From IMG/VR virus record IMGVR_UViG_3300022744_000022, positions 1 through 64,000 of that record: 64,000 bases of DNA, one strand, 5' to 3'. Numbering within the stretch: position 1 is the first letter of the stretch; every line of letters starts with the position of its first letter. The translations under genes were made by a program, and so were the position numbers. Below the pieces are notes generated by a model, which made no database searches, was not told where the DNA came from, and saw nothing but the letters and a program-made list of their open reading frames with translations. This document shows positions 1-5,785 of this stretch, piece after piece.

Positions 1-1053
1 GCGGACAAGCTCAAGCAGCCCTACCGTATCAAAATTATCAGCTCTGCCCGTGGTGATACTCGTAAGGGCGAGTGGATGTACGGTAAGCGTGTAGATGAAC
101 TGGCGGACAACCTTAAGGGTATGGCCAAGAATCTGCGGGATTTGTCCGCGTTTGTGGCGGCTGGTGATAACAGCACGGACAAGCTGCTCAACTACATCTT
201 GGACAACATGACCAGTGTGGTTGCGGGTTGGGATCCTGTGGCTCGCCGAGCTACAACCACGACCAGCACGTTGCGTGAGCAGATCACGCACGACACCGCC
301 ATTTTTGCCGATGACGACGGGGATGGTGACGAGACTGAGACAGAAGAAGCGGTGCCGGAAGTGGGCGACGATGGTTCGCTAGGGGTTACCAAGAAGGACA
401 ACAACGACGAGTTGCCTAAGGGTCTTGGCGCGGTGCAGTTTTTGTACCAAATGGCGGTACCTAACGCTAACGATCAAGAGTACAACACGGATCCTTCTAC
501 GGCCCAAGGGTTCGTAGCAAAGATTGCTCGGTACTCGAAGTTGTCTGAGACCCTGCGCATTGATCCCGAGAAGTGGGAGCGAGATCAGAACAAGATCGCG
601 GATCCTGGGCAGCGTAGGGCGAAGCCTCCAGCTATCACGCTTTCTACGGTACACTCGGTCAAGGGTCTTGAGTGGCCTAACGTTTCGGTGTTGATGCCTG
701 CGGGTAAGTTCCCGCCTGTGCGTAAGCCTCGTCCCGATGAGCCCCCACCTGATCCGGTAGAAGAGGCGGAGAAGCTGAAGGCTGAGCGCAACTTGGCGTA
801 TGTGGCTTTGACCCGCGCTGCCGTGAATCTTGAAGTGTTGTGCCCTATGATGTCGGGTTCGATGCAGGCAGGAATCAGCCCCTTTGTTATTGAGGCTGGC
901 CTCAAGGTTGGGGAGAACGTTCCGAAGGGCGAGGTGTTCGAGTCTGGGGAGAAGACCGCTGCTGTTGAGGCTATGGATCCCCATGTGTTGGAGACCTTAG
1001 AGCGGTTCGCAGATGAGCTGCCTGCCCCGTCGTACGATCGGAGGGGGTCATGA
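1..1053 (+). CDS. UvrD/Rep/PcrA-family (SF1A) DNA helicase, C-terminal part (5' truncated by window edge)
   Basis: Frame is open from base 1 (ADKLKQPYRIK...). Contains ITLSTVHSVKGLEWPNV (motif V) and ERNLAYVALTRA...SPF (motif VI), typical of the UvrD C-terminal domain. Confidence 0.9.
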   Translation, partial: ADKLKQPYRIKIISSARGDTRKGEWMYGKRVDELADNLKGMAKNLRDLSAFVAAGDNSTDKLLNYILDNMTSVVAGWDPVARRATTTTSTLREQITHDTAIFADDDGDGDETETEEAVPEVGDDGSLGVTKKDNNDELPKGLGAVQFLYQMAVPNANDQEYNTDPSTAQGFVAKIARYSKLSETLRIDPEKWERDQNKIADPGQRRAKPPAITLSTVHSVKGLEWPNVSVLMPAGKFPPVRKPRPDEPPPDPVEEAEKLKAERNLAYVALTRAAVNLEVLCPMMSGSMQAGISPFVIEAGLKVGENVPKGEVFESGEKTAAVEAMDPHVLETLERFADELPAPSYDRRGS

Positions 1054-1875: not shown

Positions 1876-2508
1876 ATGCCACCGCTCAAGAAGACACAGC
1901 AGCCGCGTCGCGTGGCTATGGTGACGTTTGGGACCGACGGGTTTGTGGACTACGTGCAGGTCCCGGACGGCCAGCGGTACATGCTGGGTCCGGTTTCGGT
2001 GCTCAAGTTGATCACCGGCTTGGTTCCCACGCGAACCGCTAGGGTGGCGCTCAAAGAATTCGTGTCTTCGCAGCAGGTGATGCTGCCTGTGGACCTCGAC
2101 CGGATGTGGGCAATGCTGCCCTTTCGGCGGGCTCGGTTTTCGTCCACTACTAACCCTCTTATGAGGGGCCCTGATCGTCAGGCTCAGATTGCTCGCTGTG
2201 GCGAGACGGAGAAACAAGCCGCCATGCTCAAGACCGCTTCCTACGATACGTTCACCGCCAATGTGGAACTCGCCGAAGACATCGTAGCCAAGGTTGCGGC
2301 GACGGATGAGGCGATTGAGCGTCTTAAGACCGCTGGTAAGCGGTTTGATTCGGTTCGTGCCAAGGCGGACCTTCACAAGATCGCGTCTCGGGTTGCTGAG
2401 ATTGCTCAGAACGTGGATCTCGCGCAACCGTGGGTTGGCAACGACCTGGCGGATCTCTCTAAGCAGGCGACTGAAATCCATGGGCTGTTCGAGCCTAAGG
2501 AAGTCTGA
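1876..2508 (+). CDS. hypothetical protein (210 aa), helical C-terminal half rich in K-x-A motifs
   Basis: ORF with AGGGG SD; codon usage like neighbouring genes. Confidence 0.85.
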   Translation: MPPLKKTQQPRRVAMVTFGTDGFVDYVQVPDGQRYMLGPVSVLKLITGLVPTRTARVALKEFVSSQQVMLPVDLDRMWAMLPFRRARFSSTTNPLMRGPDRQAQIARCGETEKQAAMLKTASYDTFTANVELAEDIVAKVAATDEAIERLKTAGKRFDSVRAKADLHKIASRVAEIAQNVDLAQPWVGNDLADLSKQATEIHGLFEPKEV

Positions 2509-2545
2509 AACCCGCCTCCCCTCTGACCGCTGAAGGAGTCCTGAA

Positions 2546-3256
2546 ATGGCGAACGTATCAACTTCCAACTACATCTACCGGATGGGCACGGCTCCGAATA
2601 CTCGGGCCGCTGTATCCCAGAAGAACAAGATCTACGGCTACACAGTCGGTGTGGGCGGCTTTCAGCAGCTTGGGGTGATCTCGGAGTTCGGCTTCGATGA
2701 GTCGCGTACCATCGATCCGATCCGTGGCGTCGGCTTTGGTGACCAGATCGCTGAGTTGGTGCCGTCAGTCACCGACCCGATGACCCTGACTTTGAACAAG
2801 ACGCTGCTCTACACGGCGAACTTGTATCAGATCCTGGGGTACAAGGGCGGCATCGATGGTTTGGCGCGTTCTCTGCGTCACCACCGTTGGCCCTTTGACA
2901 TCAAGCAGGAGTTGGTGTTCTCGGAGCTGGCGTCGCTCCAAGACCCTAATGGCGTTTCGGTCCAAGCGACGGTCACAACGGGTCCCACGAGTGCGGACAA
3001 CCCGATCGTTACCCCGCGTGCGCTGCTGACGTTCTACGAGGGTTGCTGGATGAACAGCTACTCGGCGAGCTTCACCAGTGACTCGGCGATGGTGGCTGAG
3101 AACTCGTCTGTGACGGTCACAGACATCATCGACGGCGTGAGCCAGTACGGTGAGTTCATCGATACGGGTCTTGCGCCGGTATCGGCGAATGGCGGTCCGG
3201 GCAAGGGCTTCTCCCTGAGGTTCGCCAACAACAGCAATTCGGTCGTTCCGGTCTGA
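2546..3256 (+). CDS. tail tube protein (contractile tail, gp19-like)
   Basis: AAGGAG SD, 236 aa. Beta-rich pattern GVISEFGFDESRTIDPIRGVGFGDQIAELVP...LTLNKTLLY and terminal FYEGCWMNSYSASF...VAENSSVTVTD resemble tube proteins. Lies upstream of chaperone-like genes and the tape measure. Confidence 0.75.
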   Translation: MANVSTSNYIYRMGTAPNTRAAVSQKNKIYGYTVGVGGFQQLGVISEFGFDESRTIDPIRGVGFGDQIAELVPSVTDPMTLTLNKTLLYTANLYQILGYKGGIDGLARSLRHHRWPFDIKQELVFSELASLQDPNGVSVQATVTTGPTSADNPIVTPRALLTFYEGCWMNSYSASFTSDSAMVAENSSVTVTDIIDGVSQYGEFIDTGLAPVSANGGPGKGFSLRFANNSNSVVPV

Positions 3257-3261
3257 CCAGG

Positions 3262-3283
3262 TAGCCGCCCTTTAGGGCGGCTA
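3262..3283 (+). terminator. GC-rich hairpin after the tube gene (terminator or mRNA-stabilising stem)
   Basis: TAGCCGCCC-TTTA-GGGCGGCTA, a perfect 9-bp stem 5 nt after the stop. No strong U-tract. Confidence 0.55.
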
Positions 3284-3291
3284 GTTCATGG

Positions 3292-3437
3292 GTGACAGCG
3301 GTTGAGCTAGATGTACATCAAACCAGATCAAACCAGATGTGAATTTTAGGTCGTAGGTAGTCGCACTAGACCCAGATGTAGATCCCGTTCGATTTAATTC
3401 AGCGCTGTCATCCTCACCAAACAAGATGAGGATGAGA
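3292..3437 (+). promoter_or_regulatory. structured 5' leader with competing stems, one occluding the SD of gene 3437
   Basis: GTGACAGCG(3292-3300) pairs with CGCTGTCAT(3403-3411). TCATCCTCA(3408-3416) pairs with TGAGGATGA(3427-3435, contains the SD). Internal ATCAAACCAG tandem repeat and AGATGT x3. Confidence 0.5.
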
Positions 3438-4498
3438 TGAGCACGTTATCAGCAAAGAAACTCAATGAGGCCCTATCCAAGGCCAAAAATGTTGGCCTTG
3501 TCGAAGAGAGCTTCACGATTGAGGACTGCGAGCTAACGCTTCGCAATCTGCGCCCAGCCGAGTACGCGGACGTTCTTCAAGACTGCTCGGGTCTTGAGAG
3601 TGTGGAGTATCTGAACGCCTATCAACGAGGGCATCTGGCTCGTTCGATAGTGGCGATCAATGGGATTGATCTGCACTCAACGGACTTCGTAGAGGTCGAA
3701 GAAGACGACCCTAAAAAGCCCGGGCAAGTCCGAACGGTGAAGCTAGAGCTTCATACGTACTTGAACAAGCACGTGCTCCGCACGTGGAGCAAAGAGGCCG
3801 TCTACACGGCTATGCGTAAATTTGGGGATGTGGTCGCAGCGGCTGAGCGCAAAGCTAAGGATGGGATCACTTTCGTGGTCGCTGACGAGACTCCGGAAGA
3901 GAAGTACCGTCGTTTATTGCTAGAGGCCAAAGAGTGCGAGGACGAGATCCCCGCCACTATGTTGGACAGCATTCTTGACGACATGGGCTTCATGCGGAAG
4001 TCCACTGCTGACGAGATCAAAGCGGCGATGGCCAGAACGGATGCTTTGGCTCGCGAGCAGGAAGTCCAAGCCCCTACCCCGGAGCCCGTTCCAGTCGCTC
4101 CTGAGCCGGTGGTATCGAGGCCCATTGAGCCCGAGCCCGAAGCCCCACAGGCGGCTAGGCGGCCTTCTGTGGCAGACCCGCATGTAACGCTCCAGCAGGC
4201 GATTGCAGCCCGTCAGGCCCCTGTCCCAGCCCCAGCTACGCCAGTCGTTCAAGCAGCTCAAGGCGAAAGCCCTGCCGTAAGCCGTACCTCCGAAATTGCT
4301 GCCCTAGAGGCCGACTTGCCGACCTCTTTACCAGGTAGTCATGGGCCGATTGAGGTGTACCGTCCGGAACAACGTCCGGAGCCTGTAGAGCTGCGCCAGC
4401 GGCAGCAACCGTTTGATGCTTCTGCGGCATCTGCGATTCTTGACAAGCCCCCCGCAGCCGGGATCAACCCGAGGTTCCGTCCTCCGCCCAAGGTCTAA
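3437..4498 (+). CDS. putative tail assembly chaperone 1 (globular N-terminus, Pro/Ala-rich disordered C-terminus)
   Basis: Lies between tube and tape measure. ELTLRNLRPAEY...LARSIVAING pattern. Confidence 0.6.
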   Translation: MSTLSAKKLNEALSKAKNVGLVEESFTIEDCELTLRNLRPAEYADVLQDCSGLESVEYLNAYQRGHLARSIVAINGIDLHSTDFVEVEEDDPKKPGQVRTVKLELHTYLNKHVLRTWSKEAVYTAMRKFGDVVAAAERKAKDGITFVVADETPEEKYRRLLLEAKECEDEIPATMLDSILDDMGFMRKSTADEIKAAMARTDALAREQEVQAPTPEPVPVAPEPVVSRPIEPEPEAPQAARRPSVADPHVTLQQAIAARQAPVPAPATPVVQAAQGESPAVSRTSEIAALEADLPTSLPGSHGPIEVYRPEQRPEPVELRQRQQPFDASAASAILDKPPAAGINPRFRPPPKV

Positions 4499-4501
4499 AG
4501 T

Positions 4502-5785
4502 ATGTCTGGTGCAGCTCAGACATACGAGGCAGAGCAGAAGAAGCTCCAGGCTGAGTACAGTGGGCAGCCTCAGGGGGACATCCACATCACGGTTCCGAAA
4601 GAACCGGAGGTCAATCCTGAGGTCTACAAGGACGTGGAACCCATGCTGTACCGTGGGTTCCTTACGGTACAGGCCGAGATCAACGGGGTCTACTTCGTAT
4701 TCAAAAGCTTGAACCACCACGAGCTGGAGCTACTCCGTTTCAGTGGTGGCTTTCGTGGGGATCGCGTCACCGCCAAGTTCTGGGACATTTTCCTGGCCTA
4801 CGGTGTGTTCATGGTCGATGGGGTCAACATCCTCGCTGAGCGAGACAGGTGGATCCCTAAGTTAGCCGAGACGTTTGGGGGCCTGCCTAAGGAAGCACGT
4901 TCAATGATCGTCCGGCATGTGGGCGAGGTGAACAGGCGGTCTTCTAACGCGGTGGCTCTCACGGAAGCGTATGCAATGGAGGCGATGTCTCGTTACCGTT
5001 GGATGCAGCTCAAGGGTCTGGATTTGTCTTCGCCTGCGGTGACTGGGATCGAGGGAACGCAGCGGTTGGGCCTCAACTGGGCGCAGCATCTTTGGCGGGC
5101 TCTAAACCATGCCGAGGATCGAAATGAGCAGCACGAACGGGAGTGGGAGAACGCCAAGTTCGTAGGGTCTTGCTTCGCGGGTAAGGGTATCTCGAAGGTC
5201 TACAACCAGGACAATGATCGTCGGCGTAAGGACAAGGAGGAGCGTCTTTCGCGTAAAGACAAGGTGCTTCGCGAGATCGTCCTGGGGGAGAAAACGGAAG
5301 CCCACACTCTTACGATTCCTGGGGCTGTGATCACAGCTCCGAGGACGGTCGAGGAGCTTGCGTCGCAGTTGGAGAAGGATCTCCGGGGCGACAAGGATTG
5401 GCACGACAAGGTGATCGAAGCCCATGAGACGAAGATCCGGAATCAATACGGTGAACGTCAGGCTCAGCTTGAGGTCGTGGCAAAGGAGAACGCGGTTCAA
5501 TTCGGCGACCGCAGTGTAGTGGGTGGTTCCGACGTACAGGGTCTGACGCCCGAAGAAGTTGCTGCGCGAGTGGAGAGGCGTAAGCAGCTTCAAGCGCAGG
5601 AAGCGGCTCGGAGACAGGTCCATCCCGAAATCCAGGATGAGAAGACGCAGAACTTCCTGAATAAGTGGGGCGTTCTCGGGCCTGAGGTTGCGACCGAAAT
5701 TTCTACTACAGATCAGGATATATCAGGGGCTGTTCCTTTACCGACAGTGCGGGCTCCGGCTACCCCGTTCCGAAGAAAGACGTGA
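4502..5785 (+). CDS. putative tail assembly chaperone 2 / pre-tape-measure protein
   Basis: Immediately before the tape measure. FVFKSLNHHEL...LAYGVFMVDG resembles the previous gene's N-terminal domain. Confidence 0.55.
   Translation: MSGAAQTYEAEQKKLQAEYSGQPQGDIHITVPKEPEVNPEVYKDVEPMLYRGFLTVQAEINGVYFVFKSLNHHELELLRFSGGFRGDRVTAKFWDIFLAYGVFMVDGVNILAERDRWIPKLAETFGGLPKEARSMIVRHVGEVNRRSSNAVALTEAYAMEAMSRYRWMQLKGLDLSSPAVTGIEGTQRLGLNWAQHLWRALNHAEDRNEQHEREWENAKFVGSCFAGKGISKVYNQDNDRRRKDKEERLSRKDKVLREIVLGEKTEAHTLTIPGAVITAPRTVEELASQLEKDLRGDKDWHDKVIEAHETKIRNQYGERQAQLEVVAKENAVQFGDRSVVGGSDVQGLTPEEVAARVERRKQLQAQEAARRQVHPEIQDEKTQNFLNKWGVLGPEVATEISTTDQDISGAVPLPTVRAPATPFRRKT

What the first reader, a model, noticed from the sequence alone, without database searches (positions are those of the whole stretch)
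3292..3437. Switch-like RNA leader ahead of the chaperone/tape-measure operon
Seen: an imperfect ~19-bp outer stem (GTGACAGCG-G-TTGAG-C-TAGAT with ATTTA-A-TTCAG-CGCTGTCAT) competes for nt 3408-3411 with a perfect 9-bp stem (TCATCCTCA/TGAGGATGA) that buries the GAGGA SD of gene 3437. The enclosed loop holds a tandem ATCAAACCAG repeat, CCAGAT x3, AGATGT x3 and a GGTC...GACC hairpin. Inference: a protein- or processing-dependent translational switch that sets the chaperone and tape-measure level relative to the abundant tube protein, or an unannotated structured RNA.
Basis: partly seen in the sequence, partly recalled or inferred. Interest (0 to 1): 0.65.

Follow-up and report, generated by a model that had tools for sequence, protein, structure and literature searches.

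The report
Conserved megaphage leader RNA gating chaperone
The 180-base gap between the tail-tube gene and the tail-assembly-chaperone gene of an uncultivated freshwater megaphage holds a structured RNA leader, conserved in dozens of related huge phages and absent from Rfam, whose two competing pairings hide or expose the chaperone's ribosome-binding site.

Summary

The element is conserved at the same place, just 3' of the tube gene, in at least 33 related IMG/VR loci. There is one strong copy per genome. In 30 distinct sequences 10 of 12 modelled pairs show compensatory changes, and no shuffle in 500 reached the observed value on any of the five measures.

The long-range stem P1 (3290-3300 / 3403-3413) and the ribosome-site hairpin P3 (3408-3416 / 3427-3435) compete for 3408-3413. 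Both pairings are conserved, and the two states differ by only about 2-3 kcal/mol.

Inside P1, about ten R-A-Y triplets spaced 5-6 nt apart flank a variable hairpin. This resembles how TRAP recognises RNA, but the phage genomes searched hold no TRAP, CsrA or Hfq homologue.

The downstream protein has a tail-assembly-chaperone fold (HK97 chaperone, Z 7.7). The upstream protein is probably the tube.

Rfam has no match. My best reading is a leader RNA that acts on its own mRNA and tunes chaperone translation, probably through a protein that binds the repeats. The switching and the factor are inferred, not shown. It is a new RNA family of a known mechanistic kind.

The parts
2546..3256 (+). Upstream gene, 236 aa, probable contractile-tail tube protein (context)
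   Evidence: 75 homologous loci at 39-94% identity. Language-model features score 0.96 (187 of 256 shared) to clusters carrying PF26461 Phi812_tail_tube and PF09393. No Pfam, PHROG or PDB sequence hit. The AF2 model was poor, pLDDT 41.
3262..3283 (+). Perfect 10-bp hairpin just after the tube stop codon, with no U tract
   Evidence: Inverted repeat I1. It does not meet the terminator consensus. It is present in only some relatives.
3290..3300 (+). P1 5' strand. Its first bases, GGGUG 3290-3294, can pair with the anti-SD (the strand that pairs with the ribosome-binding site) and so free that site
   Evidence: Inverted repeat I2. Compensatory changes. Extension pairs: 84% paired, with UA changing to CG.
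3302..3312 (+). Inner continuation of P1, 5' side (TTGAG, TAGAT). Pairs with 3392-3402 in this sequence
   Evidence: Read directly from the sequence. Relatives form an irregular helix here, but in different registers.
3309..3344 (+). 5' array of seven R-A-Y units spaced 6,5,5,5,5,6 nt. It includes boxes AGAUGUACAU and AGAUGUGAAU and the tandem AUCAAACCAG
   Evidence: A is invariant at 3311, 3317, 3322, 3327, 3332 and 3337 in 18 sequences, and 17 of 18 at 3343. GAT is enriched, 138 against 51 +/- 7, and spacings of 5, 6 or 10 occur 42 times against 2.2. Chains of 4-8 units against 1.7 in shuffles.
3349..3372 (+). P2, a central hairpin (GGUC...GACC) of variable sequence
   Evidence: Present in the MFE folds of the window and its relatives. 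The sequence is not conserved, and covariation was not established.
3369..3384 (+). 3' array GACCCAGAUGUAGAUC: three G-A-Y units spaced 6 and 6 nt
   Evidence: A3370, A3374, A3376 and T3377 are invariant; 3379-3383 are nearly invariant except 3381 (G 13, C 3, A 2 of 18). The AGACCCARAU core recurs in the leader of a second large gene in relatives.
3392..3402 (+). Inner continuation of P1, 3' side (ATTTA, TTCAG)
   Evidence: Read directly from the sequence. The register is not conserved.
3403..3413 (+). P1 3' strand. Bases 3408-3413 are shared with P3
3408..3435 (+). P3, a hairpin that sequesters the ribosome-binding site: anti-SD 3408-3416, loop 3417-3426, SD strand 3427-3435 (GAGGA 3428-3432)
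   Evidence: Inverted repeat I4. -13.6 kcal/mol on its own. 92% paired, and 4 of 5 modelled pairs have compensatory changes.
3437..4498 (+). Regulated gene, 353 aa: tail assembly chaperone with a Pro-rich linker and a conserved C-terminal motif
   Evidence: AF2 pLDDT 79.7. Residues 5-142 match the HK97 tail assembly chaperone 2ob9 (Z 7.7, 100 of 104 residues) and YqbN 3klu (Z 6.5); the next hit is Z 4.7. Foldseek probability 0.89 to 2ob9. Weak TAC_1 and TAC_5 leads. Alignment A6.

Best explanation
Bases 3290-3439 are the structured 5' leader of the tail-assembly-chaperone gene, transcribed on the + strand together with the tube gene. It belongs to an RNA family shared by a clade of 300-530 kb phages.

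The leader can adopt two pairings. In one, a local 9-bp hairpin (P3) buries the Shine-Dalgarno sequence. In the other, the long-range stem P1 lengthens by four to six pairs into the anti-SD strand (GGGUG 3290-3294 with CAUCC 3409-3413), so P3 cannot close fully and the ribosome site is freer. The two states are nearly equal in energy, so the leader sets a damped, adjustable rate of chaperone translation relative to the tube. By translational coupling it may also affect the tightly packed genes behind the chaperone.

Inside P1, single-stranded arrays of R-A-Y triplets at 5-6 nt spacing flank a variable hairpin. I infer that these arrays are the docking site of a multimeric RNA-binding factor, and that its binding remodels P1 and shifts the balance. 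This would work like TRAP at trpE, where protein binding to triplet repeats lets a hairpin that blocks the ribosome site form.

Shown: the structure, its conservation, both alternative pairings, the periodic repeats and the identity of the downstream gene.
Inferred: that switching happens, its direction, and the factor.

The confidence given is for the whole statement. For the narrower claim, a conserved leader RNA that governs access to the ribosome-binding site of gene 3437, I would put it at about 0.8. For operation by a repeat-binding protein, about 0.35.
For: - Stability: z -4.8 and -5.1.
- Conservation: the element lies at the same position in 33 related loci at E < 0.02, with no hit elsewhere in their flanks. 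There is a single strong copy in the 208-kb contig and in two complete relatives of 398 and 411 kb. 715 kb of unrelated viral DNA gave no full-length hit.
- RNAalifold on a plain MAFFT alignment recovers P1 and P3.
- On 30 distinct sequences, 95.2% of cells are paired and 10 of 12 pairs have compensatory changes. No shuffle in 500 reached the observed value on any of the five measures. Controls with the partner strand slid by 1-3 columns pair only 32-78%.
- P1 has many sequence versions in different clades: GACAGCG, GGCGACG, GACGGCGACGA, GACGACGAUGAAG, GACGGCUUGG.
- The P1 extension was not part of the search model, yet it is 84% paired, with UA (18) changing to CG (8). Its 3' partners are the same columns that pair with the SD in P3.
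- Energetics: opening the SD costs a median of about 2 kcal/mol across homologues, because P1 extends as P3 opens. In the window the states are -49.8, -48.1 and -46.6 kcal/mol, against -13.6 for P3 alone.
- Periodic invariant A's, GAT enrichment and spacing, and chains of units.
- G.U pairs fit the + strand only.
- There is no terminator-like or promoter-like site in the gap.
- The TRAP precedent: 11 G/UAG repeats with 2-3 nt spacers wrapped round a ring (PMC3913778), and TRAP-promoted structural change that hides a ribosome-binding site (PMC4347634).
Against: - No expression or probing data exist. The public runs that hold this DNA are metagenomic DNA only.
- No candidate binding protein was found. 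TRAP, CsrA and Hfq families are absent from five genomes of the clade.
- The long R-A-Y chains are confined to the core clade. Minimal versions (L022, L046, L052, L054, L041) keep P1, one AGAUGNNNAU box, a hairpin and P3, with only 1-3 units. That fits poorly with a ring that needs about ten sites.
- The near-equal energies could simply mean constitutive partial occlusion with no regulation.
- The folding energy of the -40 to +12 window around the start codon is unremarkable for this GC-rich genome (18th percentile).
- The inner part of P1 and P2 lack demonstrated covariation.
- The alignments used for one search were fitted to the model.
Confidence: 0.5

Rival explanations
1. A static element with no switch. 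P3 simply keeps chaperone translation low at all times. The long irregular P1 helix, with the hairpin at 3262-3283, serves as an RNase III-type processing site or a stability barrier that separates the abundant tube message from the distal tail message, as the intergenic R sites of T7 do.
For: - In the window P1 plus its inner continuation is a 19-21 bp irregular duplex, about the size of an RNase III substrate.
- The element sits exactly between a gene needed in many copies and genes needed in few.
- A hairpin follows the tube stop codon.
- The gap has no terminator or promoter consensus, so the genes are probably co-transcribed and could be processed afterwards.
- Relative late-protein levels are set at translation initiation in phage lambda (from memory, Sampson and Hendrix 1988).
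Against: - Only the outer 11 bp of P1 are conserved; the inner register varies.
- A processing site does not explain the invariant periodic A's and the AGAUGNNNAU boxes.
- It also does not explain why the P1 5' end keeps its complementarity to the anti-SD.
- The upstream hairpin is missing in many relatives.
Confidence: 0.22
2. A signal at the level of transcription: a nut- or put-like RNA that modifies RNA polymerase for processive antitermination through the 46-kb tail operon that starts at 3437.
For: - The leader heads a 46-kb run of + strand genes with no gap of 110 nt or more.
- The layout, linear conserved boxes on both sides of a variable hairpin, recalls boxA-boxB.
- The same AGACCCAGAUC and RAUC repeat module, with a hairpin, lies after a terminator-like hairpin in the leader of a second very large gene in five relatives, where the SD is free.
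Against: - No Rfam antitermination family matches.
- The covarying P1 and P3 tie the element to the ribosome-binding site, which an antiterminator does not need.
- The hairpin sequence is not conserved, unlike boxB.
Confidence: 0.08
3. A riboswitch: the domain enclosed by P1 is an aptamer for a small molecule that stabilises P1 and opens the ribosome site.
For: - The architecture is typical of a translational riboswitch: a closing stem P1 whose 3' strand overlaps the anti-SD.
- The junction bases are highly conserved.
Against: - The conserved bases are short direct repeats whose number varies (1-8 units), rather than a fixed junction core.
- Minimal versions lose most of them.
- A tail-assembly gene has no obvious metabolite logic.
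- There is no Rfam match.
Confidence: 0.05
4. The single-stranded arrays are a ribosome standby or enhancer platform. 30S subunits (for instance through protein S1) wait there for P3 to open transiently, and no dedicated regulator is involved.
For: - The arrays are G-poor, rich in A, C and U, and predicted to be largely unpaired.
- A similar array precedes a free, strong SD in the leader of the giant gene of relatives.
Against: - Strict 5-nt periodicity with invariant A-Y is more specific than a generic unstructured platform.
- The arrays lie 60-120 nt from the start codon and are enclosed by P1.
Confidence: 0.1

Closest known systems
Bacillus subtilis trp leader with TRAP, including translational control of trpE
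   Same: Many short triplets (here R-A-Y, about ten) separated by 2-3 spacer bases in a leader. There are alternative structures, one of which is a hairpin that hides the Shine-Dalgarno sequence. In TRAP's case, protein binding to the repeats decides which structure forms (PMC3913778, PMC4347634).
   Different: The triplets are GAU, AAU, GAC or AAC, not GAG or UAG. No TRAP homologue was found in five genomes of the clade. The number of units varies from 1-3 to 8 between lineages. There is no terminator or antiterminator pair. The context is a phage tail gene. Binding is not shown.
Phage Mu Com activating mom translation; MS2 or PP7 coat protein with the replicase operator; T4 RegA, gp32 and gp43 operators
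   Same: Phage mRNAs whose translation start lies in a hairpin and is controlled by a phage protein that binds the leader. This is from general knowledge, not tested here.
   Different: Those operators are single small hairpins or short linear sites. Here there is a 120-nt domain closed by a long-range stem, with repeated units. No homology was tested or expected.
Translational riboswitches (closing stem P1 coupled to an anti-SD)
   Same: The 3' strand of the closing stem overlaps the anti-SD, so the stability of P1 decides ribosome access.
   Different: The conserved core consists of direct repeats in variable number. No ligand logic is apparent. No Rfam family matches.
Intergenic RNase III sites of T7-like phages and the lambda N leader
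   Same: An irregular duplex of about 20 bp between late genes with different abundance needs. Processing there could change access to the ribosome-binding site.
   Different: Only the outer 11 bp are conserved. The conserved single-stranded repeats have no counterpart in those sites. Cleavage was not tested.

Membership tests
Any Rfam 15 family | A covariance-model match at or near the gathering score | tested here: not met
   cmscan of 2500-4500 at E <= 10 gave one hit inside the finding (3292-3437): a 14-bit TMV pseudoknot hit on the minus strand (gathering score 34). It also gave a 20-bit local hit of the ryfA 3' end on the hairpin at 3257-3286 (gathering score 80).
TRAP-regulated leader | 9-11 GAG or UAG triplets separated by 2-3 nt | tested here: not met
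   The spacing matches (5-6 nt), but the triplets are R-A-Y (GAU, AAU, GAC, AAC), not NAG.
TRAP-regulated leader | A TRAP (MtrB, PF02081) protein is available | tested here: not met
   No PF02081 match in G000, G001, G002, G004 or G005, while the control rings in B. subtilis. The host is unknown, so a host protein cannot be excluded.
TRAP-regulated leader | Alternative leader structures, one of which blocks the SD | tested here: met
   The extended P1 and P3 share 3408-3413. Both pairings are conserved, and their energies lie within 2-3 kcal/mol.
CsrA/Rsm-bound leader | GGA motifs, preferably in hairpin loops and over the SD, and a CsrA protein | tested here: not met
   The boxes read AGAUG or AAAUG, with the G variable. 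There is no PF02599 match in five genomes.
Hfq distal-face site | (A-R-N)n triplets with period 3, and an Hfq protein | tested here: not met
   The period is 5-6, not 3. There is no PF17209 match in five genomes.
Intrinsic terminator or attenuator | A GC-rich hairpin followed by a U tract | tested here: not met
   No terminator-like site in 2400-3700. P3 is followed by GAUGAGCACG.
RNase III processing site | An irregular duplex of about 20 bp or more that is cleaved by RNase III | tested here: inconclusive
   A 19-21 bp duplex is possible in the window, but only 11 bp are conserved. Cleavage cannot be tested here.
Riboswitch | A fixed conserved aptamer core that binds a small ligand | not testable with these tools
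   The conserved bases are repeats in variable number. Ligand binding cannot be tested here.
Upstream leader peptide (uORF) control | A conserved short ORF with its own ribosome site | tested here: not met
   The ATG at 3311 opens a 12-codon frame in the window only. In most relatives the same ATG is followed at once by TGA, TAA or TAG, or by a different short frame.
Tail assembly chaperone (product of 3437-4498) | The TAC fold, and a gene placed between the tube and the tape measure | tested here: met
   HK97 TAC 2ob9 at Z 7.7 and YqbN 3klu at Z 6.5 stand above the next hit at 4.7. The gene order is tube, this gene, a 427-aa ORF, a 1083-aa ORF, a tube-initiator-like gene and a hub with an SLT domain.
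Tail assembly chaperone (product of 3437-4498) | A programmed -1 frameshift giving a longer fusion protein (G/GT type) | not tested
   The next ORF starts with its own ATG at 4502, after the stop at 4498. No search for slippery sites was made.

The most novel reading that the evidence does not exclude
The R-A-Y arrays are wrapped by a ring-shaped or helical multimer encoded by the phage itself, possibly a tail-assembly component such as free tube or chaperone protein. Unassembled tail protein would then feed back on chaperone translation through the P1/P3 switch. That would be a TRAP-like mechanism, evolved independently, that couples virion assembly state to translation in huge phages.
Probability: 0.15. 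Interest if true: 0.85.

Novelty: new variant of a known kind. Interest (0 to 1): 0.62.

Why it matters
Huge phages are known almost only from metagenomes, and very little is known about how they regulate their genes.

This is a well-supported, family-wide regulatory RNA at a defined control point of tail assembly, the step from the many-copy tube to the few-copy chaperone and the genes behind it. It has a clear and testable architecture: two conserved competing helices plus a periodic repeat array that points to an unknown RNA-binding factor.

If the factor exists, finding it would reveal a new RNA-recognition system. If it does not, the leader is still a clean example of stoichiometry control by RNA structure. 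It is also a useful marker for this phage clade and for locating its tail module.

Tried and rejected
- tRNA or tmRNA: none in the window.
- Known RNA families, including self-cleaving ribozymes: no Rfam hit.
- Close relatives among deposited phage genomes: none by megablast.
- Leader peptide: the frame is not conserved.
- Promoter or terminator consensus in the gap: none.
- A genome-wide regulon of the boxes:
  - AGATGTRNAT and the strict pentamer array occur in G000 essentially only here.
  - Paired boxes in five relatives are confined to this leader, apart from one other site in G001.
  - Most other matches to the pentamer pattern in relatives fall inside coding sequence.
  - The 10-mer AGACCCARAT is not above its control genome-wide.
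- A 14-mer scan of viral contigs returned chance matches only. I used them as a negative control for the model.
- A weak second model hit in G004 lies inside a gene.
- TRAP, CsrA and Hfq homologues in the phages: none.
- Fold of the tube protein: the AF2 model was too poor to search (pLDDT 41). Profile searches of PDB and Pfam gave nothing.
- Expression: no RNA run holds the sequence.
- The catalogue of 8,495 candidate structured RNAs from IMG/VR (PMC10690425) may already list this element under a number. Its supplementary files are not held, so I could not check.
- The raw folding energy around the start codon is not exceptional in this GC-rich genome. I therefore do not use it as an argument.

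Full report
**Setting**

The window is the first 64 kb of a 208,486-bp IMG/VR virus contig. CheckV rates the contig 44% complete. Its relatives are contigs of 300-530 kb, some with terminal repeats and rated 100% complete. This is therefore an uncultivated huge phage. The only public runs that hold the sequence are freshwater and wetland DNA metagenomes.

The finding lies in the 180-nt gap 3257-3436, between ORF 2546-3256 (236 aa) and ORF 3437-4498 (353 aa). It is the only gap of 110 nt or more until 49,331. Behind it lie 46 kb of closely packed + strand genes.

**Check of the observation**

- The outer stem is 3292-3300 with 3403-3411. The repeat finder extends it to 3290-3300 with 3403-3413.
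- The inner pairs TTGAG/TTCAG and TAGAT/ATTTA can form.
- The perfect 9-bp stem 3408-3416 with 3427-3435 covers GAGGA 3428-3432.
- The tandem ATCAAACCAG, three CCAGAT, three AGATGT and the GGTC...GACC hairpin are all there.

The fold is much more stable than dinucleotide shuffles (z -4.8 and -5.1, 0 of 200). The box AGATGT[AG]NAT occurs three times here and once in the remaining 208 kb.

**The flanking genes**

The 353-aa product folds with good confidence (pLDDT 79.7). Residues 5-142 match the HK97 tail assembly chaperone (2ob9, Z 7.7, 100 of 104 residues aligned) and the XkdN-type YqbN (3klu, Z 6.5). The next hit is at Z 4.7, and Foldseek gives probability 0.89 for 2ob9. After this domain come a Pro-rich linker and a conserved C-terminal motif.

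The 236-aa protein is highly conserved. It has no Pfam, PHROG or PDB sequence match, and its model was too poor to use. Its language-model features do point to clusters that carry tail-tube families (0.96).

Further downstream lie a tube-initiator-like gene and a hub with a lytic transglycosylase domain. "Tape measure" for the 1083-aa ORF rests on position and size only.

**Conservation of the RNA element**

Using the tube protein as an anchor, I fetched 75 related loci. Most have a gap of 100-250 nt at the same place, with recognisably the same element.

- A MAFFT alignment of 18 sequences, analysed with RNAalifold, recovers P1 and P3 with compensatory changes.
- A covariance model built from it finds the element at the same position in 33 loci at E < 0.02, and nowhere else in 480 kb of flanks.
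- It finds a single strong copy in the window's contig and in five relatives, two of them complete genomes.
- It finds nothing full-length in 715 kb of unrelated viral DNA.

On 30 distinct sequences:
- 95.2% of cells are paired.
- 10 of the 12 modelled pairs carry compensatory changes.
- No shuffle in 500 reached the observed value on any of the five measures.
- Sliding the partner strand by 1-3 columns drops pairing to 32-78%.

P1 exists in many sequence versions in different clades. The frequent G.U pairs are compatible with the + strand only. More distant clades (for example L058, L033, L035, L042) show the same plan by eye, although the model scores them weakly. A few lineages (L039, L040, and the distant L071-L077) lack the element.

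**The two competing pairings**

The 3' strand of P1 always abuts the strand that pairs with the Shine-Dalgarno sequence or the start codon. Four further pairs can form between the bases just 5' of P1 and the first bases of that anti-SD strand. These columns were unpaired in the search model, so the alignment was not fitted to them. They are nevertheless 84% paired, with U-A in 18 sequences and C-G in 8 at one position. Slid controls give 34-62%.

The same 3' bases are the ones paired to the SD in P3. These bases thus keep two partners, which is the signature of alternative structures.

The energies agree with this. Across homologues, forcing the SD open costs a median of about 2 kcal/mol, because P1 extends as P3 opens. 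In the window:
- the extended-P1 state is -49.8 kcal/mol;
- the state with all of P3 enforced is -48.1;
- extended P1 with the SD and AUG fully free is -46.6;
- P3 alone is worth -13.6.

**The repeats**

Column statistics on the 18-sequence alignment show invariant A's at 3311, 3317, 3322, 3327, 3332 and 3337, and nearly invariant at 3343. Each is preceded mostly by a purine and followed by a pyrimidine. That makes seven R-A-Y units spaced 6,5,5,5,5,6 nt. Three more G-A-Y units lie at 3369-3383, spaced 6 and 6 nt, on the other side of the variable hairpin P2.

GAT is nearly three times over-represented inside P1 across the family. Spacings of 5, 6 or 10 occur 42 times, against 2.2 in shuffles. 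These sequences are related, so the counts overstate independence.

Chains of units reach 4-8 in the core clade but only 1-3 in the minimal versions, which keep P1, one AGAUGNNNAU box, a hairpin and P3.

This layout resembles RNA recognition by TRAP. TRAP binds 11 G/UAG triplets with 2-3 nt spacers wrapped round a ring (PMC3913778), and it can also promote a structural change that hides a ribosome-binding site (PMC4347634). It is not the same system: the triplets differ, and I found no TRAP, CsrA or Hfq family member in five genomes of the clade.

**Interpretation**

Best reading: a leader RNA that acts on its own mRNA and controls access of ribosomes to the chaperone start through two conserved competing helices, probably operated by a multimeric factor that binds the repeats.

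The structure, its conservation, the dual pairing and the periodicity are shown. Switching, its direction and the factor are inferred.

Rivals:
- A static occluding structure that doubles as an RNase III-type processing or stability site.
- A ribosome standby platform.
- A nut- or put-like antitermination signal at the head of the long operon.
- A riboswitch.

One observation bears on these. In five relatives, the leader of a second, very large gene 12-15 kb upstream of the tube carries the same AGACCCAGAUC and RAUC repeats around a hairpin, but with a free SD and no P1 or P3. The repeat-hairpin-repeat unit therefore looks like a module of its own, and P1/P3 is what couples it to the ribosome-binding site here.

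**Novelty**

Rfam 15 has no match. I found no description in the searched literature. A large catalogue of candidate structured RNAs from IMG/VR (PMC10690425) may contain the element as an unnamed entry, but I could not check it.

The mechanism class, a leader with an SD-sequestering hairpin and a competing helix, is well known. The family, its periodic R-A-Y arrays and its place in tail assembly of huge phages are new as far as I can tell.

**Limits**

- There are no transcript or probing data.
- The host is unknown.
- The alignment for the main covariation count was fitted to the model, although the MAFFT-based result and the unmodelled extension pairs agree with it.
- The inner part of P1 and P2 lack demonstrated covariation.

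Noticed in passing
window 3262-3283: A perfect 10-bp GC-rich hairpin lies 6 nt after the tube stop codon, with no U tract. It could be a 3' stabiliser or a non-canonical terminator. It is present in only some relatives.
   Followed up: partly
L200, L202-L205 (relatives G001-G005), leaders of a 1430-1560 aa gene 12-15 kb upstream of the tube gene: After a terminator-like hairpin, these leaders carry the same AGACCCAGAUC and RAUC/AAUC repeats on both sides of a hairpin, with a free AAGGAG SD and no P1 or P3. The protein starts IGPFISYAPPGVY, which looks sheath-like from memory. Pfam gives only a weak DUF2460 hit. This part of the genome is missing from the window's contig.
   Followed up: partly
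G001:8528-8553 (- strand; locus L201): Three AAAUGUAAAU-type boxes in a row sit in the gap before an 84-aa ORF. This is the only place outside the tube leader with paired boxes in five relatives.
   Followed up: partly
window 76-1050: The ORF at the contig start has a UvrD-like helicase C-terminal domain. The tube gene is therefore preceded here by non-structural and small unknown genes, not by head genes.
   Followed up: no
window 3437-49330: 46 kb of + strand genes without a gap of 110 nt or more, including ORFs of 2065, 1693, 1499 and 1169 aa. The leader is the only long non-coding stretch at the head of this block.
   Followed up: partly
window 3437-4498: The chaperone has an unusual build: a chaperone-fold domain (about residues 5-142), helices to about residue 211, a Pro-rich linker of low model confidence, and a conserved C-terminal motif PPxAGINPRFRPP. 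The next ORF (4502-5785) has its own ATG, so the usual frameshifted G/GT arrangement is not evident.
   Followed up: partly
L055 about 3900-4360: In one relative a small Cys-rich ORF (KTCAKCGGPGPF...), possibly a mobile endonuclease-type gene, is inserted between the leader and the chaperone gene.
   Followed up: no
L043 / L078 3712-3963: In these relatives the gap after the tube gene is 252 nt of unrelated sequence without the element. It may hold a small gene on the opposite strand.
   Followed up: no
L212 (G004: about 32.5-32.9 kb, - strand): A non-coding stretch made of repeated CCGAACC, CCGUA and AAUCCUCA-type units. Its nature is unknown.
   Followed up: no
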